This document shows, in pieces, positions 857 through 34,162 of a stretch of 34,371 bases of DNA (its first letter is position 1; every line of letters starts with the position of its first letter). Origin of the DNA: Macrostomum lignano (lineage: Eukaryota); contig NIVC01000966.1 in NCBI GenBank assembly GCA_002269645.1, forward strand, positions 1-34,371, given 5' to 3'. Both the position numbers and the translations under genes were made by a program. The notes beneath the pieces were generated by a model. That model was not told the DNA's origin. It ran no database searches and was given only the letters and a program-made list of their open reading frames with translations.

Positions 857-1939
857 CTAGTCCCCACGAATGCAGCACGGAAACACAAATTGCGTAAACT
901 GTCGTTGAAAAGCCAAATAGATCAGCGGATTCACTAGCGAGTTGATGGCAGACAAGAACGGGAATACAAACAGCACGGCCATGGGATTAATTCGCGCGGC
1001 CGCCATCGGATCTACGTACCACAGCATCGAGCTACATGAATCTGGCATGTTCAACGCGATGAACGCGACTACGGTCAGGCCGATTATTAACGTTAATCGA
1101 CGCGATGCGGCTTCCGATTTTGATCCATTCGGTTGCAATCCGGCCGATCGTCTCAGCTGCACAATGATGATGGCGTAGCAGCACAGCATACAGACTGCTG
1201 GCAGGAATATCACCGTGCCCCAGCAGAGCCACACCAGCACGGTGATCAGCGTGGATGGCACTTGACTGCGAAAATCGCATATTATAATCGTTGGAGCCGG
1301 CGACTGCAGGGTTGCATTGTTGATGAGCTCTTCTGAACCATCTTCAATTGTGTAGTTGGAGTCCAATGGAATCGCTTGTGGCCATGCGGACAATAGCGTG
1401 GCCGGTACGTAACCATAGAAACCACTTGTAAACACCATCGTGTAGAACAGTTTCATAACTGTCCATTCGTGTCGCTTCCACCAGAACGGACAGCAGATGC
1501 ACAGACAGCGCTCAATCGAGAATGCCAGATTATTGTAGATACTGCAGATAATTAGATACCAAACTTGAATTGTCCCCTGGTTGCCTAGGAGACAGAAGGC
1601 AATCCAACCGGCGGTTACTTCCGCGACGTCGGCGCCCGGTTTTGGTATCGCTTGTAGCTGAACAAACACCAGATTAGTGACAACAACTAGCAGGTCAATT
1701 GCCGACTGACTGCGGACCAGATAGGTGGCCGATCTAGACGCAATCCGATGACGGAACGCGAACGCCAATAGGAGAATGTTGAGCAGGATTGCCAAGCTTA
1801 GCAGCGAAATAGTCACTGGCAAAGTGTTCCACTCGCCATTTCTGTGCAGCTGCTGCTGACAATGCGGAATGTTTTTGTTGCCACTTATATATCCATTTGC
1901 AATTAAGGATCTGGTCTCTCTGCTGCGCAGGTGTGCCAC
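857..1939 (-). CDS. Class A (rhodopsin-like) 7TM GPCR, orphan/peptide-receptor-like; 7TM region in one exon, 5' end incomplete
   Basis: Seven hydrophobic segments with class A landmarks: TM1 Asn (AILLNILL), TM2 Asp (SQSAIDLL), Cys before TM3 (WIAFC), TM3 SIERCLCICCP (E/DRY-like), TM5 FLP..Y, TM6 LNMP, TM7 NSLVNPLIY, helix 8 F..QF. The ORF start at 1939 is GTG and the first in-frame Met is after TM3, so an upstream exon is required. Stop TAG at 857-859. Confidence 0.92.
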   Translation of the reverse strand: MAHLRSRETRSLIANGYISGNKNIPHCQQQLHRNGEWNTLPVTISLLSLAILLNILLLAFAFRHRIASRSATYLVRSQSAIDLLVVVTNLVFVQLQAIPKPGADVAEVTAGWIAFCLLGNQGTIQVWYLIICSIYNNLAFSIERCLCICCPFWWKRHEWTVMKLFYTMVFTSGFYGYVPATLLSAWPQAIPLDSNYTIEDGSEELINNATLQSPAPTIIICDFRSQVPSTLITVLVWLCWGTVIFLPAVCMLCCYAIIIVQLRRSAGLQPNGSKSEAASRRLTLIIGLTVVAFIALNMPDSCSSMLWYVDPMAAARINPMAVLFVFPFLSAINSLVNPLIYLAFQRQFTQFVFPCCIRGD

Positions 1940-8034: not shown

Positions 8035-8809
8035 CAAGAGTGGACGACATGGACATGCAGAAAATTTGTACCTACAGATGGCAAGATTTCTCCGTCCACC
8101 TCATGTGAAGCTGTTCTTTTAAACGTACTGGCCTGCATGGGCCCCATATTTGAGGGAGTGTCACATTCCATGCCTCCCGGCCTGTGCTCAAATCCCTACA
8201 TGGTGACGTGACTTAGCTCGTATTTTAGGCTAAGCTTGCATGAGCACAGCACATAGGGCTCAGCACAATTTACCCATTGAGCACAATCACTGGCGTCTAT
8301 TCTATTCTTCTATCAACTGTACGAGCTATATAGCAAAAGACGCACGCATCATATACGAATAAGTCGACTCACTCTGGCAATAAAAAGCCAGAATAAAAAG
8401 CGAGACAGTTCCGTTAGCAATTAGCATAACGGTGTGCCGCCCCCCAGCCTACCTATCGAACGTAGAAGCCCTATAGCGTCTTTCCAGACTCTCTCCCTAC
8501 CCCTTCATCAGCCCTGCAGGCCTTCTTTCCTGTTCATTGGGGGCATTAAGGAGCATTAACTGAGTCAAGGAGACTGTAAACAAAAGATCTGGTGTGTAGC
8601 AATAGCAACTGGCCTGGAGGGGCCGCGGCTGGGAAAAATATGGCGCAGATTTCCCACTTTTCTGGCGCCCCCACGAGAAGGCGCCCCCACGAGAGCCCCT
8701 CTATAAATGTGGTTCCTCTTGTACTCGCTACTGCAGCTTCCTTTTAGCCAAACTTTAACATATTTAAAAAATTAAAAAGCATCATGGTATAAACATTAAC
8801 GATTAAAGA

Positions 8810-9000
8810 TTGCTGAGATGTCAAGGCTTATGAGGGGATTGGCTGAGATGTCAATGCTTACGGAGGGAATTGCTGAGATGTCAAGGCTTACGGAGGGAAT
8901 TGCTGAGATGTCAATGCTTACGGAGGGAATTGCTGAGATGTCAATGCTTACGAGGGGAATGCCTGAGATGTCAAGGCTCACTGAGGGAATTGCTGGGATG
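8810..9000. repeat. About 30-bp minisatellite GGAATTGCTGAGATGTCAAGGCTTACGGAG, about 6 copies
   Basis: Tandem copies; same unit family as 19946-20362. Confidence 0.92.
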
Positions 9001-10045
9001 TTAAGACTGAGCGGTCAGAAGCTACATGTAGTTTATTCAAAAAAAATTATTCCATCCTTTGTTGTCTCCCCAACGGGGGGCTCTGATGGCTAGTCTATAT
9101 AACTATGGCGCCATGCAATACTTCTATTTGTACATGTAAACCCCTAACCTTATTCTAAATGGCTGGCAGTCAAATGAAGGCAGCATATGTTCTTCTAGTC
9201 CATTTTTTGTTAATTTACACGCAAACACTCGTGAAATTGATTCAGACAAGCAAACATCACAGCCTACAGTTTATTACGAGCGTAGCTTTCAACGGTATTG
9301 TATTGTCATTATGAAGCCTCGAGGCAGTTGCATTCTGGGTTGCGTCATGTCTTTGATAACCATTTGAAGCTGTTGTAAAAGTGACTTGGCTTTGGAGAGT
9401 TCTCTATATACCTATTGTCACCAGCGTCTCATAAATTCTATTTCAAACTGCATAGCCCGACAGATTTCGCAAATTTCTCCGAATTTAGTCTAATGGATGT
9501 TCTCTAGAGCATTTCTAAGAAAAAATATTGGCTTTCTAGTCCAGCTGTGTGCTATTTTTAGACGTCCCTGAACCGGAGGCTGGCCCCCGGCTTACCAGCC
9601 AATGAGATGACGTTCACCGCTCCCCCCGGTCAGATAGCGGGCCAATGGGCTAAGATTTTTTGTTGATCTCGGCTCCATGCAGGAAGCTGAATAAAGTGGT
9701 GACCCGTCTCCCAGAAAATAGCTAATTTCCTCTCAGCCCCGAAGCCCGCCAAGTCCGGAAAGCAGTCCGCCAATAAAAATTTCTGCGGCCTCCATCGTTC
9801 ATATTTTAATATCGAGATAATCTCTACTTTCGCAGCCGCAACAATAGGGTGTCAGGTAAATTGGCGGCATTTTAATAACCTGTGCCAATTCGTCAAGGTC
9901 CCCGTCAAGACCAGATAAAGAAAAGCACAAATTAAACCATTAAGTTACAATAGCAGCCCGCGCTATTGAAGTCAGAGTTGAGTTATAGAAAAAATATACT
10001 GCTCAAAAGATTTTTGACGAGCTCAACAGCCCCCGCGCTACGGCG

Positions 10046-10067: not shown

Positions 10068-10196
10068 TTGCGGAAGTAGCGCCTTAATTCCTTTTCCACG
10101 ACAGGCCGCCCAGCCAATAAATTCCCCCCACCCCAATACGAAGCAGCCCAGAGTCTTCTTATTAAAGAGGAGCTTCTCTCTGCTCAGGTGTACTCC

Positions 10197-10572
10197 ATGA
10201 GCCTGCACAGAACAGTTGAAGAAGGCAATCAAGCGATGGACAGCAGTGGAAAACGGTTCACGTCGTTTGGCATCGATGACCTGCTTGCATCGGCACCGGA
10301 TTCTTCGCCTGCGGTGCAGCAGCAGCAGCAGCAGATTTCCACTTCTGCCTCTTGGATGCAGTTGATGCAGCAGACGACACAGCAAAGGCCAAGTTTGGCT
10401 TCCATGCTCAGCGCCTTTGGCGGCGGCGGCGGCGGCGGCTGCAGCAACACCCAGCAGCGGTGCCCGCTGCGAAAGCACAAAGCCAATAGGAAGCCCAGAA
10501 CTCCATTCACAACTCAACAGCTGATGGAGCTTGAGTCGAAGTTTGTGTCCAAGCGGTACCTGTCTATTGCAG
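10197..10572 (+). CDS. msx: Msx/msh homeobox gene, coding exon 1
   Basis: eh1-like [14 protein letters not shown] (cf. PWMQ of vertebrate Msx) and the diagnostic [33 protein letters not shown]. First ATG at 10197 (10188 is GTG). Donor GCAG|GTGAGT, phase 1. Confidence 0.96.
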
Positions 10573-10796
10573 GTGAGTTGCCCGGCATGGCGTTGGAAAT
10601 TATTCACTTTTATTCATTTTTCTAAGGATTATGGTCTTCGATGGGATCTTTTTTGATGCTGCAATGCACTAGTTCAGCAATTTAATCGAAGCTTAACCAC
10701 TTTGTAATATGCATTTTTGGCTGTTCTGGAGGGGGTAATTTTCCTAACTTGTTAGTATTATGTTTGTAAATATAATTTTCATAAGTTTGGAATAGC

Positions 10797-10932
<136 letters not shown>

Positions 10933-11606
10933 GAGGCAGGCATTCAAATCCATCGTGCACGCCCGAGTCACTCAGCTGCAAATATTTAATTGATTTTGCA
11001 GACAAATATGCAAATTTCTGCATGGACCCCATATTAATCTGTGATTGATTTAAACAGAAGCTCTACAGAACTTGTAGCGAAATTAGAAATCAATTGAAAT
11101 ACTTCCTGGTTTGTATAAATGAAGCTTAGTCAACCGGTTCGCAACTTATATAAAACAGAATTTTAAACAGCTCAGTACTCGCAGATTAATGATTCCCTGA
11201 GCTCCCATGCTCGCAAGAGGAAAGGTGCACCGATCGGTATTTAATTATTAGACTTTCGGCTTCAAATAAATACCTCGGCGAGTGACGCAAACTTCTGACA
11301 GGAGGGCGGGTCGGGCTTGAAAAGTGAAAATTAATTAATCGTCAGCCACTTTGGTAGGGGTGGTGCGCCATAGAGGGTTTGGACTGCGGGGCTTTTACTC
11401 ATGCATCGGCGCTTTTTCTGTCAACAAAATTGCTCCTAGAGGACTTGCCGCCGTCAGTTTTGAAGCAACTCTGCAGCCAACTGTCAATGAGGTTTATAAA
11501 ATTGATTGTTTGAGGCTCTCCTCTGGAAATCACACCCTCTACCTTTGAGTCTCCCCCCTCAAAATCTCAACCTACTTTTAAGCCGCTTCCATCAAAATCT
11601 CACTCT

Positions 11607-11855
11607 ACTACCTACATACCTACAAACCTATCTACCTACTTACCTACCTACCTACCCACCTATCTACCTACCCACCTATCTACCTACCCACCTACCTACC
11701 TACCTACCTACTTACCTACTTACTTACTTACCTACCTACCTGCCTACCTACCTACCTACCTACCTACCTACCTACCTACCTACCTACCTACCTACCTACC
11801 TACCTACCTACCTACCTGCCTACCTACCTACCTACCTACCTACCTACCTACCTAT
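11607..11855. repeat. (CCTA)n microsatellite, Msx intron 1
   Basis: Seen directly. Confidence 0.97.
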
Positions 11856-11905
11856 CGACTATTGAGTCGGTTCTCAAAATGAGTCTCTCATAGAAACCTT
11901 ATGGT

Positions 11906-12010
11906 TGAGTCTATTGCTGAGTCTATTGTGGAATCTATTGCTGAGTCTATTGCTGAGTCTATTGCTGGGTCTATTGCTGAGTCTACTGCTGAGTCTATTG
12001 CTGAGTCTAT
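11906..12010. repeat. 12-bp minisatellite GAGTCTATTGCT, about 8 copies, just upstream of Msx exon 2
   Basis: Seen directly. Confidence 0.95.
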
Positions 12011-12049
12011 ATGTTCCCCAACAAAACACTGCCCCCCCCCCCTACTCAG

Positions 12050-12199
12050 AGCGCGCGGAATTCTCATCAAGGCTTAGTCTAACTGAGACTCAAGTAAAAA
12101 TTTGGTTTCAAAATCGGCGAGCCAAGGAGAAACGACTGCAAGAGGCCGAGTTTGAGAAGCTGCGCTTATCGAAACACTTTCTGAGTCAGCAGGATTTCG
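12050..12199 (+). CDS. msx: Msx homeobox gene, coding exon 2
   Basis: Acceptor CTACTCAG|AG completes GAG (Glu) and gives [39 protein letters not shown], typical Msx helix 2-3 and downstream motif. Donor TTCG|GTGAGT, phase 1. Confidence 0.97.
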
Positions 12200-12295
12200 G
12201 TGAGTGACATCATGCGTTGCTTTCTAAAAATAGAATGAAGGTTGAGAGATAGACAGGTAGGTTGAGAAGAAATGAGACAGCATAGGGGCAGGGAG

Positions 12296-15677: not shown

Positions 15678-18090
15678 TACCCCTCTCTATATACCTCTCT
15701 CTACCTCTCCTCCCTTTCCTCTACCTCTCTCTGCCTCTCCTCCCTTCCCTCTACCTCTCTCTACCTCTCCTCCCTTCCCTCTACCTCTCTCTGCCTCTCC
15801 TCCCTTCCCTCTACCTCTCTCTGCCTCTCCTCCCTTCCCTCTACCTCTCTCTACCTCTCCTCCCTTCCCTCTACCTCTATCTACCTCTCCTCCCTTCCCT
15901 CTACCTCTCTCTGCCTCTCCTCCCTTCCCTCTACCTCTCTCTGCCTCTCCTCCCTTCCCTCTACCTCTCTCTACCTCTCCTCCCTTCCCTCTACCTCTCT
16001 CTGCCTCTCCTCCCTTCCTCTACCTCTCTCTGCCTCTCCTCCTTCCCTCTACCTCTCTCTGCCTCTCCTCCCTTCCCTCTACCTCTCTCTGCCTCTCCTC
16101 CCTTCCCTCTACCTCTCTCTGCCTCTCCTCCCTTCCCTCTACCTCTCTTTGCCTCTCTCTACCTCTCCTCCCTTCCCTCTACCTCTCTTTGCCTCTCTCT
16201 ACCTCTCCTCCCTTCCCTCTACCTCTCTCTGCCTCTCCTCCCTTCCCTCTACCTCTCTCTGCCTCTCCTCCCTTCCCTCTACCTCTCTCTACCTCTCCTC
16301 CCTTCCCTCTACCTCTCTCTGCCTCTCCTCCCTACCTCTCTCTGCCTCTCCTCCCTTCCCTCTACCTCTCTCTGCCTCTCCTCCCTTCCCTCTACCTCTC
16401 TCTACCTCTCCTCCCTTCCCTCTACCTCTCTCTGCCTCTCCTCCCTTCCCTCTACCTCTCTCTACCTCTCCTCCCTTCCCTCTACCTCTCTTAGCCTCTC
16501 TATATACCTCTCTCTACCTCTCCTCCCTTCCCTCTACCTCTCTTTGCCTCTCTATATATCTCTCTCTACCTCTCCTCCCTTCCCTCTACCTCTCTTTGCC
16601 TCTCTATATATCTCTCTCTACCTCTCCTCCCTTCCCTCTACCTCTCTCTACCTCTCCTCCCTTCCCTCTACCTCTCTTTGCCTCTCTATATACCTCTCCT
16701 CCCTTCCCTCTACCTCTCTTTGCCTCTCTATATACCTCTCCTCCCTTCCCTCTACCTCTCTCTGCCTCTCCTCCCTTCCCTCTACCTCTCTCTGCCTCTC
16801 CTCCCTTCCCTCTACCTCTCTCTACCTCTCCTCCCTTCCCTCTACCTCTCTCTGCCTCTCCTCCCTTCCCTCTACCTCTCTCTGCCTCTCCTCCCTTCCC
16901 TCTACCTCTCTCTACCTCTCCTCCCTTCCCTCTACCTCTCTCTGCCTCTCCTCCCTTCCCTCTACCTCTCTTTGCCTCTCTCTACCTCTCCTCCCTTCCC
17001 TCTACCTCTCTTTGCCTCTCTCTACCTCTCCTCCCTTCCCTCTACCTCTCTCTGCCTCTCCTCCCTTCCCTCTACCTCTCTCTGCCTCTCCTCCCTTCCC
17101 TCTACCTCTCTCTACCTCTCCTCCCTTCCCTCTACCTCTCTCTGCCTCTCCTCCCTTCCCTCTACCTCTCTCTACCTCTCCTTCCTTCCCTCTACCTCTC
17201 TTTGCCTCTCTCTACCTCTCCTCCCTTCCCTCTACCTCTCTTTGCCTCTCTCTACCTCTCCTCCCTTCCCTCTACCTCTCTCTGCCTCTCCTCCCTTCCC
17301 TCTACCTCTCTCTACCTCTCCTCCCTTCCCTCTACCTCTCTCTGCCTCTCCTCCCTTCCCTCTACCTCTCTCTACCTCTCCTCCCTTCCCTCTACCTCTC
17401 TCTGCCTCTCCTCCCTTCCCTCTACCTCTCTCTACCTCTCCTCCCTTCCCTCTACCTCTCTCTGCCTCTCCTCCCTTCCCTCTACCTCTCTCTACCTCTC
17501 CTCCCTTCCCTCTACCTCTCTCTGCCTCTCCTCCCTTCCCTCTACCTCTCTCTACCTCTCCTCCCTTCCCTCTACCTCTCTCTGCCTCTCCTCCCTTCCC
17601 TCTACCTCTCTCTGCCTCTCCTCCCTTCCCTCTACCTCTCTCTGCCTCTCCTCCCTTCCCTCTACCTCTCTCTACCTCTCCTCCCTTCCCTCTACCTCTC
17701 TCTGCCTCTCCTCCCTTCCCTCTACCTCTCTTTGCCTCTCTATATATCTCTCTCTACCTCTCCTCCCTTCCCTCTACCTCTCTTTGCCTCTCTATATATC
17801 TCTCTCTACCTCTCCTCCCTTCCCTCTACCTCTCTCTACCTCTCCTCCCTTCCCTCTACCTCTCTTTGCCTCTCTATATACCTCTCCTCCCTTCCCTCTA
17901 CCTCTCTTTGCCTCTCTATATACCTCTCCTCCCTTCCCTCTACCTCTCTTTGCCTCTCTATATACCTCTCCTCCCTTCCCTCTACCTCTCTTTGCCTCTC
18001 TTTACCTCATCACCTTTCCCTGTACCTCTCTTTACCTCTCTCTACCTCTGCGCTTCCCTCCACCTCTCTGTCTACCTCTCACCCTCCATC
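15678..18090. repeat. 2.4-kb polypyrimidine minisatellite, 30-bp unit CTACCTCTCTCT(G/A)CCTCTCCTCCCTTCCCT, about 75 copies
   Basis: Seen directly; source of the 500-690 aa L/P/S pseudo-ORFs. Confidence 0.98.
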
Positions 18091-19945: not shown

Positions 19946-20362
19946 GAGGGAATTGCTGAGATGACTAGGCTTACCGGAGAGAATTGCTGAGATGTCAAGG
20001 CTTACTGGGGGGAATTGCTGAGATGTCAAGGCTTACTGGGGGGAATTGCTGAGATGTCGAGGCTTACCGGGGGGAATTGCTGAGATGTCGAGGCTTACCG
20101 GAGAGAATTGCTGAGATGTCAAGGCTTACTGGGGGAATTGCTGAGATGTCAAGGCTTACTGGGGGGAATCGCTGAGATGTAAAGGCTTACCGGAGAGAAT
20201 TGCTGAGATGTCAAGGCTTACCGGGGAGAATCGCTGAGATGTCAAGGCTTACCGGAGAGAATTGCTGAGATGTCAAGGCTTACCGGAGAGAATTGCTGAG
20301 ATGTCAAGGCTTACGGGGGAATTACTGAGATGTCGAGGCTTACGGGGGATTGTTTAGATGTT
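19946..20362. repeat. About 31-bp minisatellite GAATTGCTGAGATGTCAAGGCTTACCGGAGA, about 13 copies
   Basis: Seen directly; same family as 8810-9000. Confidence 0.95.
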
Positions 20363-22428: not shown

Positions 22429-22987
<559 letters not shown>

Positions 22988-23344
22988 TTGAGGTGCCGGG
23001 CGTGTTTTGATGTACTGCACTGCACCTGACTCACCTGAGTCCAATAATGAGTAACTCTAACTAGCCAGCCAGCCTAACTAACCAAACCGGCCTACTCCGG
23101 TGTACGCTGCTCTGCGTACTTTCTCTCTCTCTCCCTTGGCATGATAATATTCAGTAGTGATAGATTCTGAGTTTTAAGCCCACTTACTAGTTTGTCTTTT
23201 AAGCCTATATATTGGTCTCGCCACCTACCACCTCGTATCTCACTATCATTGCTATATTTCGCTTGTCTCAAATACACAAACTCGTACTTGACTCTAACCA
23301 AGCCCACGGGCGGCCTTGTCATCGTTTACTGGGCGCGACTTGAC

Positions 23345-23722
<378 letters not shown>

Positions 23723-24422
23723 AGCATCAGGAAATTTCGCCGACATCTGACAGAATTATTAAAAAAATCAGTTCTCTTACTAAGAGTAGTGCAGAAATAA
23801 AATCTTCCTATCAATTATTCCGAAGGATAGGCTAGCGACTCAGCGGACTATAGTTGTCTTCATGAGGACTTAAGTCTGTTATCAGCGATACTCTGTTATC
23901 CACATCAGTTCAAAATCGGCAATAAATTACGAGTTAGTATGATGATAAGTTTTATAGTCAATAAACCGGCCCATTTTATTGGTTCTGTGAGCAAATGACT
24001 TCTGCCGGTGTGCGTCTTTGATCCAGAAGCCCTCGGATAAGGACACGAATAGAAGTATAACAACAATGCACTCGATAATAAAGTTGACTGTAAACAAACA
24101 AAAATAAATAAATAATTGTAATAACGCTCAGACTTTGTATACAGCGACTGAAAAATGACAAGTTGGTTAGAAAAAATATTGTTTTTCTCCAACAAATTGT
24201 CCAAATTGAGTTCCGACAGTTTGTCAGCTTTTAAATTACTAATACGTTAAAGATTTCTACTGTCTCAAATTGAGTTGCCCCGTCCGCTCTTCTCATTTCA
24301 AAATATGCTTCAAAATTCTAAAATGTTTTCGAGGTTTTTTCGAGCATCAACTGACTAAAGTGATAGGAATGAAAACAAACAAGTTTTATAAGCAACAGTT
24401 TTTTAACTGCTGCTTGAATCGT

Positions 24423-25185
24423 CTGCAGCTGGCGTCCCCTCCGTAGCTGGCGCCCCCTCTGTAGCTGGCGCCCCCTCTGTAGCTGGCGCCCCCTCTGTAG
24501 CTGGCGTCCCCTCTGTAGCTGGCGTCCCCTCTGTAGCTGGCGCCCCCTCCGTAGCTGGCGTCCCCTCTGTAGCTGGCGCCCCCTCTGTAGCTGGCGCCCC
24601 CTCTGTAGCTGGCGTCCCCTCTGTAGCTGGCGCCCCCTCTGTAGCTGGCGTCCCCTCTGCAGCTGGCGCCCCCTCTGTAGCTGGCGCCCTTCTGTAGCTG
24701 GCGCCCTTCTGTAGCTGGCGCCCTTCTGTAGCTGGCGTCCCTTCTGCAGCTGGCGCCCTTCTGCAGCTGGCGCCCCCTCTGTAGCTGGCGCCCTTCTGTA
24801 GCTGGCGTCCCTTCTGCAGCTGGCGCCCTTCTGCAGCTGGCGCCCCTCTGTAGCTGGCGCCCCCTCTGTAGCTGGCGCCCCCTCCGTAGCTGGCGTCCCC
24901 TCTGTAGCTGGCGCCCCCTCTGTAGCTGGCGCCCCCTCTGCAGCTGGCGCCCCCTCTGTAGCTGGCGCTGACTCTGTAGCTGGCGCCCCCTCTGTAGCTG
25001 GCGCTGACTCTGTAGCTGGAGCCCCCTCTGTAGCTGGCGCCCACTCTGTAGCTGGCGCCCACTCTGTAGCTGGCGCCCTTCTGTAGCTGGCGTCCCTTCT
25101 GCAGCTGGCGCCTTTCTGTAGCTGGCGTCCCTTCTGCAGCTGGCGCCCCTCTGTTGCTGGCGCCTCTCTGTAGCTAGCGCCCTTT
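24423..25185. repeat. 17-18 bp minisatellite GTAGCTGGCGCCCCCTCT, about 43 copies
   Basis: Seen directly. Confidence 0.97.
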
Positions 25186-25897: not shown

Positions 25898-26281
25898 TTA
25901 ATTCACACAGCTAGAATTGTCAGTATTGGGGCTTTCAATCTGCCGTTTTCCATAGCGGAACATGTAAGCTCGCTTTCCGAGCAGGGCTCGCTTTCCGAAC
26001 CGGAACATCTGTCGTTTTCCATAGCGGAACATGCCTCGCTTGTCGCCGGGCTCCGTCAGGTCGGAGCTGTCGTTGGCCTCGGCGGCCTCTTCCGCTGCGA
26101 CGTCCGCTGCGGCTGCGGCGGCGGCGGCGGCAGCGGCGGCCCAGTCAGCCGGAGCGGCCACGAGCCGTTGGTTCGAGCCTCGACCAGAAGGAGCGGCTGA
26201 GACACTCTCAGCCGAGAGTTGAATAGCCAGAGCTAGAAGTAGCAGCAGGGCCACTGGCACCGTTCCACTTGGTTGAGTCAT
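25898..26281 (-). CDS. Amidated neuropeptide precursor (RF/RY-amide type), 127 aa, single coding exon
   Basis: ATG at 26281; signal peptide MTQPSGTVPVALLLLLALAIQLSAESVSA; acidic/Ala spacer; KR-GMFRY-G-KR-QMFRF-G-KR-ALL-G-KR-AYMFRY-G-KR with dibasic cleavage sites and Gly amidation donors; stop TAA. Confidence 0.95.
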   Translation of the reverse strand: MTQPSGTVPVALLLLLALAIQLSAESVSAAPSGRGSNQRLVAAPADWAAAAAAAAAAAADVAAEEAAEANDSSDLTEPGDKRGMFRYGKRQMFRFGKRALLGKRAYMFRYGKRQIESPNTDNSSCVN

Positions 26282-26334: not shown

Positions 26335-26385
26335 GAATGAGCAAGAAAAATTCGAGTTTAAATGCTCATTGCGGGCAGCCAATGA
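26335..26385 (-). promoter_or_regulatory. Candidate core promoter of the neuropeptide gene
   Basis: Inr-like TCATTC (26340-26335), TATA-like CATTTAAA about 26 nt upstream, CCAAT near 26378. Motif match only. Confidence 0.35.
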
Positions 26386-26569
26386 GGGGCCAAGTGGGTG
26401 TTGCGTGGAGATGTCTTCTGGATTGGCGCAAATCGATATCTATGCGAAGGATGCTAGCGAAGCGCTAGAGACACACACTTCTCATGCTGTGAGCTGTTTG
26501 TCTGTTTTACGGAGGAGACATGGCTCTTACCTGTTAGACAACTTGGCCGCATGTTAGACAGCTGGGTGT

Positions 26570-27213
26570 CATCTGTTAGATATGAATTCCACGTGGTAGA
26601 TGGGGGCCAGGTACATGATAGACAGGAGTGCCACCTGTTAGACAGGAGTGTCGCCTGTTAGACAGGAGTGTCCCCTGTTAGACAGGAGTGTCACCTGTTA
26701 GACAGGAGTGTCCCCTGTTAGACAGGAGTGTCCCCTGTTAGACAGGAGTGTCCCCTGTTAGACAGGAGTGTCACCTGTTAGACAAGATAGTTTCGCCTGT
26801 TAGATAGGAGTGTCCCCTGTTAGACAGGAGTGTCCCCTGTTAGACAGGAGTGCCACCTGTTAGACAGGAGTGTCCCCTGTTAGACAGGAGTGTCCCCTGT
26901 TAGACAGGAGTGTCACCTGTTAGACAGGAGTGTCCCCTGTTAGACAGGAGTGTCCCATGTTAGACAGGAGTGCCCCCTGTTAGACAGGAGTGTCCCCTGT
27001 TAGACAGGAGTGTCCCCTGTTAGACAGGAGTGTCCCCTGTTAGACAGGAGTGTCCCCTGTTAGACAGGAGTGTCCCCTGTTAGACAGGAGTGTCACCTGT
27101 TAGACAGGAGTGTCCCCTGTTAGACAGGAGTGTCCCCTGTTAGACAGGAGTGTCCCCTGTTAGACAGGAGTGTCCCCTGTTAGACAGGAGTGTCCCCTGT
27201 TAGACAGGAGTGC
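26570..27213. repeat. 20-bp minisatellite CCTGTTAGACAGGAGTGTCC, about 29 regular copies plus degenerate ones
   Basis: Seen directly. Confidence 0.97.
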
Positions 27214-31300: not shown

Positions 31301-31497
31301 TCACACGGGACCAAGATTGATGCAGGAGATACCTTCGTCTGAGCTGAAGCAGCTGGGGCAGTGCAGCTGATCGCGTCTGACTCGAACGTCCGCACCGGAG
31401 CTGCCGTTGCCAAGCGGGGTGTTGCAGACGCTGCAGCGAAAGCATTTCACGTGATAGAACAGCTGCAGCGTCTCGATGGCCATCGCTGCTCCCGAGC
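31301..31497 (-). CDS. LIM-domain exon of an LMO7/LIMCH1/Smallish-like gene
   Basis: Acceptor TACACAG|GC. Joined to the previous exon gives CSHCRQELGSGAAMAIETLQLFYHVKCFRCSVCNTPLGNGSSGADVRVRRDQLHCPSC, a complete LIM closely resembling the LMO7 family (CSYC..LGKGAAMIIESLGLCYHLHCFKC..C..DLGGSSSGAEVRIRN..LYC..C, from memory). Ends at TGA 31301-31303 or splices at a weak donor at 31333. Confidence 0.92.
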
Positions 31498-31659
31498 CTG
31501 TGTAGTTGGTAGAAATCCCAGAGGCGGAAAAGTGTGGTATTTTACAATTTGTCCAATTGCATCTTGATAGCATTTTAACAGTGATCACGCGGTACGTGCA
31601 TGGTTTAAGGTCAACAGCTATAAATATAAGATAGCAGAACAAATTTGAGCTTTGCACAG

Positions 31660-31832
31660 ATTGGTACAAAGGTCTCTGATTGGTACAAAGGTCTCTGATT
31701 GGCACAAAGGTCTCTGATTGGCACAAAGGTCTCTGATTGGTACAAAGGTCTCTGATTGGCACAAAGGTCTCTGATTGGTACAAAGGTCTCTGATTGGCAC
31801 AAAGGTCTCTGATTGGTACAAATGTTGGTACA
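31660..31832. repeat. 19-bp minisatellite TTGG(T/C)ACAAAGGTCTCTGA, about 8 copies, intronic
   Basis: Seen directly. Confidence 0.96.
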
Positions 31833-33081: not shown

Positions 33082-33334
33082 TTCTCTTTAAACTGTGTGC
33101 GTGCAGCATTGCATGGACCCGGCTGCCAGGATGGATGGTCCAGTTATATACTAGCCCAACCTGGCCGACCGGATGCTCATCAGTATTTGCTCGTGGTTGA
33201 GTAATTCGATAGCTGGAATTCGCATCTATTTAGAGTGGCCTGACTATGAGAGTTGCAAATTGGTTTTACGCTCAACTGCAAGCTTTGGGTGTTGCACAGC
33301 TCCACCGTGTAAGTCTGCATAGCATCTGCCTTCG

Positions 33335-33404
33335 TCTGCCTGCCTGCCTGCGTGCCTGCCTGCCTCTCTGACTGTCTGTCTGCCTGTCTATCTGTCTGTC
33401 TTAG

Positions 33405-33435
<31 letters not shown>

Positions 33436-33439
33436 GTGG

Positions 33440-33494
<55 letters not shown>

Positions 33495-33547
33495 GTGTCT
33501 GTCTGTCTGTCTGTCTTAGTGTCTGTCTGTCTGTCTGTCTGTGTGGG

Positions 33548-33580
<33 letters not shown>

Positions 33581-33643
33581 TAGTGTCTGTCTGTCTGTCT
33601 GTCTGTCTTAGTGTCTGTCTGTCTGTCTGTCTGTCTGTGTGGG

Positions 33644-33734
<91 letters not shown>

Positions 33735-33989
33735 GTGTCTGTCTGTCTGTCTGTCTTAGTGTCTGTCTGTCTGTCTGTCTGTGTGGGTGTCTGTCTGTCT
33801 GTCTTCTGTCTGTCTGTCTAGTGTCTGTCTGTCTGTCTGTCTGTCTTAGTGTCTGTCTGTCTGTCTGTCTTAGTGTCTGCGTCTGTCTGTCTGTGTGGGT
33901 GTCTGTCTGTCTGTCTATCTGTCTGTCTTAGTGTCTGTCTGTCTGTCTGTCTGTATGTCTGTCTGTATGTCTGTCTGTCTGTCTGTCTC

Positions 33990-34034
<45 letters not shown>

Positions 34035-34047
34035 ATGTCTGTCTGTA

Positions 34048-34145
<98 letters not shown>

Positions 34146-34162
34146 ACTGACTGACTGACTGT
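33335..34162. repeat. Interrupted (TCTG)n microsatellite, about 830 bp
   Basis: Seen directly, with recurring CTTAGTG and GTGTGGGT interruptions. Confidence 0.98.

What the first reader, a model, noticed from the sequence alone, without database searches (positions are those of the whole stretch)
25898..26281. Neuropeptide precursor with a MFRY/MFRF-amide motif family
Seen: predicted GMFRYamide, QMFRFamide (N-terminal Gln, possible pyroglutamate), AYMFRYamide, the tripeptide ALLamide, and a C-terminal QIESPNTDNSSCVN with one Cys. MFRF swaps the first two residues of FMRFamide. Established: KR cleavage and Gly-dependent amidation; flatworms use xxRFamide peptides. Inference: related to flatworm xFRFamide precursors; these exact peptides may be uncharacterised, and mixing RYa and RFa in one precursor is notable.
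Basis: partly seen in the sequence, partly recalled or inferred. Interest (0 to 1): 0.7.

Follow-up and report, generated by a model that had tools for sequence, protein, structure and literature searches.

The report
Flatworm FRYamide/FRFamide neuropeptide precursor gene
An intact single-exon gene of the flatworm Macrostomum lignano encodes a small secreted precursor that would be cut into three short MFRY/MFRF-amide neuropeptides; it is an ordinary member of a known family (planarian npp-4, spiralian short-neuropeptide-F-like peptides), but it is missing from the public protein sets searched.

Summary
Window 25898-26281 (minus strand) is an uninterrupted 127-codon ORF. It has a hydrophobic signal-like N-terminus and an Ala/acidic spacer. 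A C-terminal cluster follows: KR-GMFRYG-KR-QMFRFG-KR-ALLG-KR-AYMFRYG-KR-QIESPNTDNSSCVN. Three R[FYW]G[KR][KR] motifs in one ORF never occurred in 200 dinucleotide shuffles.

The window is Macrostomum lignano: its Msx gene is 99-100% identical to two UniProt M. lignano entries.

The precursor belongs to the xFR[F/Y/W]amide family:
- A full HMMER scan of 1.84 billion proteins returned only multi-copy xFRYG/xFRFG/LFRWG-KR precursors (best E 1e-6).
- hhalign against their profile gives 97.8% probability.
- Among three planarian RFamide precursors, only Smed-npp-4 matches (22 bits against about 5).

Smed-npp-4 itself mixes FRFamide and FRYamide peptides, confirmed by mass spectrometry. The RYa/RFa mix is therefore a known trait, not a notable one. 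"ALLamide" is probably a decayed partial copy: its DNA is an 18-nt tandem duplicate of RFGKRA with two point changes.

The gene is absent from the protein collections and from the searchable literature. McVeigh 2009 and Koziol 2016, which may list it, were not readable.

Verdict: a real gene and a new (or newly annotated) member of a known kind. Interest is low to moderate. Expression, processing and receptor are untested.

The parts
25898..26281 (-). Complete single-exon coding sequence of the precursor (127 codons plus TAA stop at 25898-25900)
   Evidence: the ATG is the first after an in-frame stop 28 codons upstream
26204..26281 (-). Signal-peptide-like N-terminus (aa 1-26; hydrophobic core VPVALLLLLALAIQL; candidate cleavage after aa 24, 26 or 29)
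   Evidence: hydropathy and the -3/-1 rule; heuristic, no SignalP
26042..26203 (-). Spacer propeptide (aa 27-80), Ala-rich then acidic; the 12-Ala run at 26105-26140 is encoded by an imperfect GCN repeat
   Evidence: Tandem Repeats Finder row 26109-26140
26036..26041 (-). First dibasic (KR) convertase site, aa 81-82
26012..26035 (-). GMFRYG-KR, predicted to give GMFRYamide ([M+H]+ 672.329)
   Evidence: the 27-nt stretch 26007-26033 is 96% identical to 25938-25964
25988..26011 (-). QMFRFG-KR, predicted to give (pyro)QMFRFamide ([M+H]+ 727.371, or 710.344 with pyroGlu)
25970..25987 (-). ALLG-KR, nominally ALLamide; most likely a decayed partial copy of RFGKR (CGG to CTG, TTC to CTC)
   Evidence: family D4: 25968-25985 against 25986-26003, 89% identical, 18-nt tandem
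25943..25969 (-). AYMFRYG-KR, predicted to give AYMFRYamide ([M+H]+ 849.408)
25901..25942 (-). C-terminal non-amidated peptide QIESPNTDNSSCVN (one Cys); not conserved in relatives
26357..26362 (-). Candidate TATA-like element TTTAAA, 81 nt upstream of the ATG (inference only)
26379..26426 (-). Two CCAAT-box-like elements (ATTGG at -102, CCAAT at -145 relative to the ATG); candidate promoter region (inference only)

Best explanation
This is a genuine, intact, single-exon neuropeptide precursor gene of the flatworm Macrostomum lignano. It belongs to the xFR[F/Y/W]amide family, which comprises planarian npp-4 ('FRFamide'), annelid 'RYamide'/LFRWamide and molluscan LFRFamide precursors. Current literature treats these as the spiralian counterparts of arthropod short neuropeptide F (sNPF). 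Inferred mechanism, from the established prohormone pathway: the signal peptide directs the 127-aa protein into the secretory pathway. Prohormone convertases cut at the five KR sites, and a carboxypeptidase removes K/R. Peptidylglycine alpha-amidating monooxygenase converts each C-terminal Gly into an amide, and the N-terminal Gln of QMFRF can cyclise. The products would be GMFRYamide, (p)QMFRFamide and AYMFRYamide. There would also be a probably inert ALLamide relic and a C-terminal 14-mer. The amidated peptides would be released from neurons and act on a rhodopsin-class sNPF/NPY-related GPCR. Shown here: ORF integrity, motif architecture, improbability by chance, species, and family similarity. 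Inferred: signal cleavage, processing, amidation, expression, receptor and physiological role.
For: ORF and motifs. Chance test: (3 motifs in one ORF; never more than 1 in 200 shuffles). Hydrophobic signal-like N-terminus. Species: the joined Msx exons are 99% and 100% identical over aligned columns to UniProt M. lignano A0A1I8F4R2 and A0A1I8IT16. Family: phmmer over 1.84e9 representative proteins gave 11 hits at E 1e-6 to 8e-4. All are multi-copy xFRYG/xFRFG/LFRWG-KR precursors, and one is a bivalve (Solemya velum) protein with GSLFRFG repeats. hhalign of the protein against the profile of these hits plus Smed-npp-4 gave probability 97.8%, E 1.2e-12, over residues 80-117. BLASTP against Smed-npp-4 gave 53% identity over 38 aa, pairwise E 2e-7. 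Local phmmer gave 22.0 bits to Smed-npp-4, against 5.2 to Smed-spp-11 (YIRFamide) and 4.6 to Smed-npp-3. The layout is shared with Smed-npp-4: about 110-127 aa, an acidic spacer, then a C-terminal run of peptides separated only by KR, mixing FRFa and FRYa. Differences between copies are mostly synonymous. Copies 1 and 4 differ by one synonymous base (CGA/CGG) over 27 nt; copy 2 differs from copy 1 by CGC/CGG, AAA/AAG and Tyr to Phe. This fits selection on the peptide sequence. Literature: LFRFamides activate the oyster sNPF-like receptor, and the Platynereis RYamide precursor is re-annotated as sNPF (PMC6389622; PMC8557429). [quoted passage not shown]
Against: No transcript, peptide or expression evidence could be obtained. 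The protein is absent from a 15-billion-protein collection that does contain M. lignano UniProt entries. The similarity rests on a 6-8 residue repeated motif (xFR[FY]GKR). Such motifs can converge, and repeats inflate scores (bias terms of 3-20 bits). The PHVPFRFG C-terminal motif shared by most annelid/mollusc hits is missing, although Smed-npp-4 lacks it too. No canonical AATAAA lies within 500 nt downstream; the only ATTAAA overlaps the stop codon. The n-region of the signal peptide has no positive charge. The window is extremely prone to short tandem duplication, so part of the repeat structure is recent and may not be under selection.
Confidence: 0.75

Rival explanations
1. It is a real neuropeptide precursor, but not an npp-4/sNPF orthologue. 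It would be an independent or FMRFamide-related RFamide/RYamide gene whose resemblance to xFRFamide precursors is convergent, built from a short motif amplified by local duplication.
For: Similarity is confined to residues 80-117, that is the repeated motif and its KR flanks. The signal peptide, spacer and C-terminal peptide are not conserved. The PHVPFRFG motif is absent. Internal copies are very recent duplicates. M. lignano has other RFa/RWa propeptides (PMC9234716).
Against: A full scan of 1.84e9 proteins returned only xFR[FYW]-type precursors. No FMRF/FLRF-type precursors appeared, although those share RFGKR. Within the planarian set npp-4 is clearly preferred over the YIRFamide and TRF/TRYamide precursors. 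Phe at position -3, the mixed F/Y terminus, the N-terminal Gln copy and the C-terminal clustering all match Smed-npp-4.
Confidence: 0.15
2. It is a non-functional ORF: a chance reading frame or a dead gene copy in a minisatellite-rich region, neither expressed nor processed.
For: There is no record of the protein in any collection. The gene lies between two minisatellite arrays (24422-25182 and 26619-27212). One unit (ALLG) is already decayed. There is no canonical poly(A) signal.
Against: The frame is open from a signal-like start to a stop with five intact KR sites and four Gly-KR amidation contexts, which is very unlikely by chance. Differences between copies are mostly synonymous. There is significant library-wide similarity to a known precursor family. 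TATA-like and CCAAT-like elements lie at plausible distances. Short neuropeptide genes are commonly missed by gene predictors; the neighbouring Msx models are themselves faulty.
Confidence: 0.07
3. It is a luqin/RYamide-type or NPF/NPY-type precursor.
For: The C-terminal RYamide/RFamide endings are shared with those families, and the C-terminal part contains a Cys.
Against: From established knowledge and PMC7314547: luqin/RYamide precursors carry one or two peptides next to the signal peptide and a C-terminal pair of cysteines. NPF/NPY precursors carry one 36-40-residue RPRF/RxRYamide peptide whose Arg codon is split by an intron. Here there are 5-6-residue peptides in multiple copies at the C-terminal end, a single Cys and no intron. 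No luqin or NPF protein appeared among the hits.
Confidence: 0.03

Closest known systems
Smed-npp-4 (Schmidtea mediterranea neuropeptide precursor-4, 'FRFamide' prohormone; GenBank BK007037; Collins et al. 2010, PMC2953531)
   Same: Both are flatworm proteins of similar size (110 against 127 aa). Both have a signal peptide and an acidic spacer. Both end in a run of 5-7-residue xFRF/xFRY-Gly peptides separated only by KR. Both mix FRFamide and FRYamide, and each has one copy starting with Gln. BLASTP gives 53% identity over 38 aa. It is the best of the three planarian RFamide precursors tested.
   Different: Met instead of Val/Ala at position -4 (MFR[YF] against [VA]FR[FY]). There is no extra copy directly after the signal peptide. 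One copy has decayed to ALLG. A 14-residue C-terminal extension peptide with a Cys is present, whereas npp-4 ends at the last Gly. The spacer contains a poly-Ala run. The Smed-npp-4 peptides are mass-spectrometry-validated; these are only predicted.
Annelid 'RYamide'/LFRWamide precursors (Platynereis, Capitella), now annotated as sNPF, and unnamed relatives P0001, P0004, P0006, P0009, P0011
   Same: Multi-copy xFRYamide peptides flanked by KR, with mixed aromatic C-termini in one precursor. These are the best library-wide hits (E 1e-6 to 8e-4); profile match 97.8%.
   Different: The annelid-type precursors are longer (about 180-215 aa), have 8-10 copies including LFRWamide, and have acidic spacers between copies. 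They end with a conserved PHVPFRFG motif that the window protein lacks.
Molluscan LFRFamide precursors (Lymnaea, Crassostrea, Haliotis; here P0007 and P0010 = Solemya velum KAL5010774.1)
   Same: xxLFRFG-KR repeats with Phe at -3. The ligands have been shown to activate sNPF-type receptors in oyster and abalone (PMC6389622; PMC9071130).
   Different: The molluscan peptides are nearly all RFamide with Leu at -4. The window peptides have Met at -4, and two of three end in Tyr-amide.
FMRFamide / YIRFamide precursors (molluscan and annelid FMRFamide genes; Smed-spp-11; M. lignano Mlig001796.g3, which encodes FMRFa/YMRFa)
   Same: Multi-copy short RFamide peptides with Gly-KR processing sites.
   Different: Those are tetrapeptides with an aliphatic residue at -3 ([FY][MLI]RFamide). 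Here Phe is at -3, Tyr-amide variants occur and the peptides are 5-6 residues long. The score to Smed-spp-11 is only 5.2 bits. M. lignano already has a separate FMRFa/YMRFa propeptide (PMC9234716).
Arthropod short neuropeptide F
   Same: The proposed orthologous signalling system (sNPF/PrRP-type receptors). Peptides are short, amidated and in multiple copies, ending in RF/RYamide.
   Different: The arthropod consensus xPxLRLRFamide (Arg at -4, Leu at -3) is not met. As for all spiralian members, the link is through receptors, not peptide sequence (PMC6389622).

Membership tests
Spiralian xFR[F/Y/W]amide precursors (flatworm npp-4 / annelid RYamide / molluscan LFRFamide; sNPF-type) | N-terminal signal peptide | tested here: met
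   Hydrophobic core at aa 8-22 and (-3,-1) cleavage candidates after aa 24, 26 and 29. Heuristic only; SignalP was not available.
Spiralian xFR[F/Y/W]amide precursors (flatworm npp-4 / annelid RYamide / molluscan LFRFamide; sNPF-type) | Several short (5-9 aa) peptide copies, each followed by Gly and a dibasic site | tested here: met
   Three full copies plus one decayed copy, all followed by GKR.
Spiralian xFR[F/Y/W]amide precursors (flatworm npp-4 / annelid RYamide / molluscan LFRFamide; sNPF-type) | C-terminal motif Phe-Arg-(Phe/Tyr/Trp)-amide | tested here: met
   MFRY, MFRF, MFRY, compared with the VFRF/AFRF/VFRY of Smed-npp-4 and the VFRY/LFRW/LFRF of the hits.
Spiralian xFR[F/Y/W]amide precursors (flatworm npp-4 / annelid RYamide / molluscan LFRFamide; sNPF-type) | Statistically significant sequence similarity to known members | tested here: met
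   phmmer E 1e-6 library-wide; hhalign 97.8%; BLASTP to Smed-npp-4 E 2e-7 pairwise. Caveat: the similarity is limited to the repeated motif region.
Spiralian xFR[F/Y/W]amide precursors (flatworm npp-4 / annelid RYamide / molluscan LFRFamide; sNPF-type) | Conserved C-terminal PHVPFRFG peptide (annelid/mollusc members) | tested here: not met
   Absent; the C-terminus is QIESPNTDNSSCVN. It is also absent from Smed-npp-4, so it does not define the flatworm branch.
Spiralian xFR[F/Y/W]amide precursors (flatworm npp-4 / annelid RYamide / molluscan LFRFamide; sNPF-type) | Peptides activate an sNPF/PrRP-type GPCR | not testable with these tools
   Needs a receptor expression assay. The GPCR ORF in the window (857-1939) shows no specific similarity to NPY/sNPF receptors.
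Spiralian xFR[F/Y/W]amide precursors (flatworm npp-4 / annelid RYamide / molluscan LFRFamide; sNPF-type) | Neuronal expression and detectable mature amidated peptides | not testable with these tools
   No transcript or peptide data are reachable, and the protein is not on record in the collections.
Arthropod sNPF | C-terminal xPxLRLRFamide consensus | tested here: not met
   The peptides are [G/Q/AY]MFR[YF]amide. The same holds for all spiralian LFRFamide-type peptides (PMC6389622).
FMRFamide / YIRFamide-type FLP precursors | Tetrapeptide core [FY][MLI]RFamide in many copies | tested here: not met
   Phe at -3 and Tyr-amide variants; 5.2 bits to Smed-spp-11; no FMRFamide precursor among the hits.
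Luqin / RYamide | One or two peptides next to the signal peptide and a C-terminal motif with two cysteines | tested here: not met
   The peptides sit at aa 83-111 after an 80-aa leader, and there is a single Cys (aa 125). The definition of the feature comes from established knowledge.
NPF / NPY | Single 36-40 aa peptide ending RPRF/RxRYamide, with an intron in the Arg codon | tested here: not met
   Peptides are 5-6 aa in several copies and the coding sequence has no intron. The feature is as described in PMC7314547.

The most novel reading that the evidence does not exclude
The gene is not an npp-4/sNPF orthologue. Instead it would be a Macrostomum-specific RY/RFamide family, assembled recently by in-frame micro-duplications in a genome that duplicates short units at very high rate. 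The ALLG unit and the 27-nt near-identical copies would be snapshots of copy birth and decay. It would then be a case of ongoing neuropeptide-repertoire turnover driven by minisatellite-type mutation, in a gene still missing from the public M. lignano proteome.
Probability: 0.1. Interest if true: 0.45.

Novelty: new member of a known kind. Interest (0 to 1): 0.25.

Why it matters
M. lignano is a laboratory model with RNAi, transgenesis and a simple nervous system. An sNPF/npp-4-type ligand gene that the public protein sets lack is a useful annotation. It gives three defined peptides, with exact predicted masses, for peptidomics, antibody work and receptor deorphanisation. It also adds an early-branching flatworm (Macrostomorpha) data point to the question of how LFRFamide, RYamide and sNPF peptides relate across Spiralia. 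It does not change the picture of neuropeptide evolution, because architecture, motif and the RYa/RFa mix are all as already described for planarian npp-4. The internal DNA repeats are a small but clear illustration of how peptide copy number changes: a 27-nt copy with one synonymous difference, and an 18-nt tandem copy decaying to ALLG.

Tried and rejected
- The word-indexed homologue search with the precursor found nothing, and the exact-sequence contig look-up found nothing on record.
- Pfam gave no family; the only match was a spurious weak hit of the poly-Ala/acidic spacer to Ribosomal_60s.
- Full-text searches for MFRY/MFRF strings returned only irrelevant papers.
- McVeigh et al. 2009 could not be read by PubMed id or PMC id, and Koziol et al. 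2016 has no PMC id. Prior publication of these exact peptides therefore remains open.
- The supplement of PMC9234716 holds only channel constructs, not M. lignano propeptides.
- I considered whether the GPCR ORF at 857-1939 could be the cognate receptor and rejected this as unsupported. It is a divergent orphan with only weak TM6-7 matches to rhodopsin and opioid receptors, and no relatives in the word-indexed search.
- The first taxon reading, 'another Macrostomum species or a paralogue, 84% identity', was corrected. The alignment shows 99-100% identity, with the deficit due to gaps in the UniProt gene models.
- The bacterial-type promoter/terminator scan is irrelevant for this eukaryote and found nothing of note.
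- Rfam and tRNA scans of the window were empty.
- The minisatellite-artefact idea was rejected. Tandem Repeats Finder reports no array over the peptide region, and the units differ in length (24, 24, 18, 27 nt) and in synonymous positions.
- Luqin and NPF assignments were rejected on architecture.

Full report
**1. What is in the sequence**

The minus strand of window 25898-26281 is an uninterrupted 127-codon reading frame ending in TAA:

[127 protein letters not shown]

- The ATG is the first in-frame ATG after a stop 28 codons upstream.
- Residues 8-22 form a strong hydrophobic core, followed by small-residue cleavage candidates after residues 24, 26 and 29. This is a heuristic; SignalP was not available.
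- The rest is an Ala-rich then acidic spacer, followed by a compact C-terminal cluster in which every unit is followed by Gly-Lys-Arg.
- Unit coordinates are GMFRYGKR 26012-26035, QMFRFGKR 25988-26011, ALLGKR 25970-25987 and AYMFRYGKR 25943-25969. A 14-residue tail with one Cys follows.

**2. More than chance, and not a minisatellite**

The window is crowded with minisatellites: 49 Tandem Repeats Finder rows. A repeated peptide could therefore in principle be a repeat artefact.

- Tandem Repeats Finder reports no array over the peptide region; it flags only the (GCG)n run of the poly-Ala spacer.
- The units are 24, 24, 18 and 27 nt long.
- The motif R[FYW]G[KR][KR] occurs three times in the six-frame translation of the window, and all three are in this ORF.
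- In 200 dinucleotide-preserving shuffles the mean was 0.22 per window and never more than one per ORF.

**3. Internal history of the units**

- The 27-nt stretch encoding (x)MFRYGKRQ(I/M) occurs twice (25938-25964 and 26007-26033) with a single, synonymous difference (CGG/CGA).
- The MFRF copy differs from the MFRY copies by two synonymous changes (CGC/CGG, AAA/AAG) and by Tyr to Phe.
- The 18 nt encoding LLGKRA (25968-25985) are a direct tandem duplicate of the 18 nt encoding RFGKRA (25986-26003), with two point changes: CGG to CTG and TTC to CTC.

I therefore read 'ALLamide' as a decayed partial copy rather than a designed product (inference). The mostly synonymous differences between the full copies fit selection on the peptide, although the numbers are small.

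**4. Flanks**

- Upstream of the ATG on the coding strand lie a TATA-like TTTAAA (-81), an inverted CCAAT (-102) and a CCAAT (-145). These are plausible promoter elements but unproven.
- Within 500 nt downstream the only poly(A)-like hexamer is an ATTAAA overlapping the stop codon. This is a weak point.
- The gene lies between two minisatellite arrays, 24422-25182 and 26619-27212.

**5. Whose genome**

The window also carries an Msx-type homeobox gene. Its exon ends at 10574 with donor GTGAGT, and the next exon is 12050-12200.

The joined exons hit two UniProt Macrostomum lignano proteins far above all others (E 8e-77 and 1e-59). The alignment shows 99% and 100% identity over aligned columns. 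The apparent 84-87% came from gaps in those gene models.

**6. What family**

*Searches that found nothing:*
- The word-indexed search found nothing.
- Pfam has no model for it.

*Library-wide similarity:*
- A full HMMER scan of 1.84 billion representative proteins gave 11 hits at E 1e-6 to 8e-4.
- All 11 are multi-copy precursors of xFRYG, xFRFG or LFRWG peptides flanked by KR.
- One is a Solemya velum (bivalve) protein with GSLFRFG repeats.
- These are the annelid 'RYamide'/LFRWamide and molluscan LFRFamide precursors.
- A profile of the hits plus Smed-npp-4 matches residues 80-117 with 97.8% probability.

*The planarian member, Smed-npp-4:*
- Its sequence is MNSL...KRSSVFRFGKR...KRSVAFRFGKRRGVAFRFGKRGSVFRYGKRQSVFRYG.
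- It was recovered from the supplement of Collins et al. 2010, where SSVFRFa, RGVAFRFa and QSVFRYa were detected by mass spectrometry.
- It aligns with the window protein at 53% identity over 38 residues.
- It scores 22.0 bits, against 5.2 for the planarian YIRFamide precursor spp-11 and 4.6 for npp-3.
- The two proteins share size, an acidic spacer, a C-terminal run of peptides separated only by KR, a Gln-initiated copy, and the mixture of Phe-amide and Tyr-amide ends.

*What the literature says:*
- Oyster LFRFamides activate an sNPF-like receptor, and the Platynereis RYamide gene resembles the LFRFamide precursor (PMC6389622).
- The Platynereis RYamide precursor is now annotated as sNPF (PMC8557429).
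[quoted passage not shown] **7. How it most likely works (inferred from the established prohormone pathway)**

- The signal peptide is removed in the ER.
- A convertase cleaves at the five KR sites.
- A carboxypeptidase removes the basic residues.
- The C-terminal Gly is converted to an amide.
- The N-terminal Gln of QMFRF may cyclise.

Predicted products and [M+H]+ values:

| Peptide | [M+H]+ |
|---|---|
| GMFRYamide | 672.329 |
| QMFRFamide | 727.371 (710.344 with pyroGlu) |
| AYMFRYamide | 849.408 |
| ALLamide (relic) | 315.239 |

The C-terminal 14-mer would also be released.

By analogy with the family, the amides would be neuronal signals acting on an sNPF/NPY-related rhodopsin-class GPCR. 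From my own knowledge, not tested here: flatworm FLPs including GNFFRFamide are myoexcitatory on flatworm muscle. None of expression, processing, receptor or physiology could be tested with these tools.

**8. Differences from relatives**

- Met is at position -4, where planarian npp-4 has Val/Ala and molluscs have Leu.
- There are only three intact copies.
- There is no copy next to the signal peptide.
- There is a poly-Ala spacer.
- A Cys-containing C-terminal peptide is present.
- The PHVPFRFG end-motif of annelid/mollusc members is absent. Smed-npp-4 also lacks it.
- The arthropod sNPF consensus is not met, as for all spiralian members.

M. lignano has at least two other RFa/RWa-type propeptides in the literature (PMC9234716). 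These are Mlig001796.g3 (FMRFa, YMRFa) and Mlig032062.g1 (..VFRWa, AYGSMPWa). Their quoted peptides differ from those encoded here.

**9. Rivals**

- (a) A real neuropeptide gene whose resemblance to npp-4/sNPF is convergent. This is possible because similarity is limited to the repeated motif, but the exclusively xFR[FYW]-type hit list and the npp-4 preference argue against it.
- (b) A silent or dying ORF. It is not excluded, because no expression data exist and the protein is absent from all collections. The intact architecture and the synonymous pattern make it unlikely, and the neighbouring Msx models show that annotation of this genome is imperfect.
- (c) Luqin or NPF type, rejected on architecture.

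**10. Novelty and verdict**

The finding is real and correctly read in its core. It is a member of a known kind: a flatworm npp-4 / spiralian sNPF-like precursor.

The RYa/RFa mixture is a known family trait. ALLamide is probably a relic.

The gene and its peptides are not in the protein collections or in the searchable paper texts. However, the two most relevant papers could not be read, and Fig. 1 of PMC3503879 lists Macrostomum peptides that I could not see. I therefore rate it 'new member of a known kind', with a real chance that it is already known. Interest is low to moderate.

Noticed in passing
window 10188-12200 (+): Msx-type homeobox gene. One exon ends at 10574 (donor GCAG|GTGAGT). 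An intron of about 1.47 kb, full of tandem repeats, follows, and the next exon is 12050-12200. The phase-1 intron splits the homeodomain after YLSIA. UniProt M. lignano models A0A1I8F4R2 and A0A1I8IT16 are identical where aligned but lack part of the homeodomain (ERAEF...WFQNRR), so they look like faulty gene models.
   Followed up: partly
window 857-1939 (-): Single-ORF rhodopsin-class GPCR (Pfam 7tm_1, E 2.4e-14; NPLIY motif). It has no relative at E<=1e-5 in the word-indexed search and only weak TM6-7 matches to rhodopsin and delta-opioid structures. TM7 has Ala where opsins carry the Schiff-base Lys. It is an orphan, possibly a flatworm-specific receptor, and there is no evidence that it pairs with the MFR[YF]amide peptides.
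   Followed up: partly
window 31301-31783 (-): An exon-like ORF with a LIM zinc-finger domain (Pfam LIM, E 2.6e-7), partly overlapped by a 19-nt tandem array at 31659-31822.
   Followed up: no
whole window, e.g. 15692-17958, 22429-22988, 23345-23689, 33334-34162: Extreme tandem-repeat load: 49 Tandem Repeats Finder rows. Examples are a 30-nt unit x79, (TAG)x186, (AGT)x115 and (GTCT)x208. These create many long spurious ORFs on both strands.
   Followed up: no
window 8809-9005 and 19946-20361: The same ~30-nt unit (ATTGCTGAGATGTCAAGGCTTACGGAGGGA, rotated) forms two separate arrays 11 kb apart, which suggests a dispersed minisatellite family or a repeat carried by a mobile element.
   Followed up: no
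window 24422-25182 and 26619-27212: The precursor gene is bracketed by two minisatellite arrays (18 nt x43 downstream, 20 nt x30 upstream). The upstream array starts about 340 nt from the ATG, which limits the likely promoter to a short interval.
   Followed up: no
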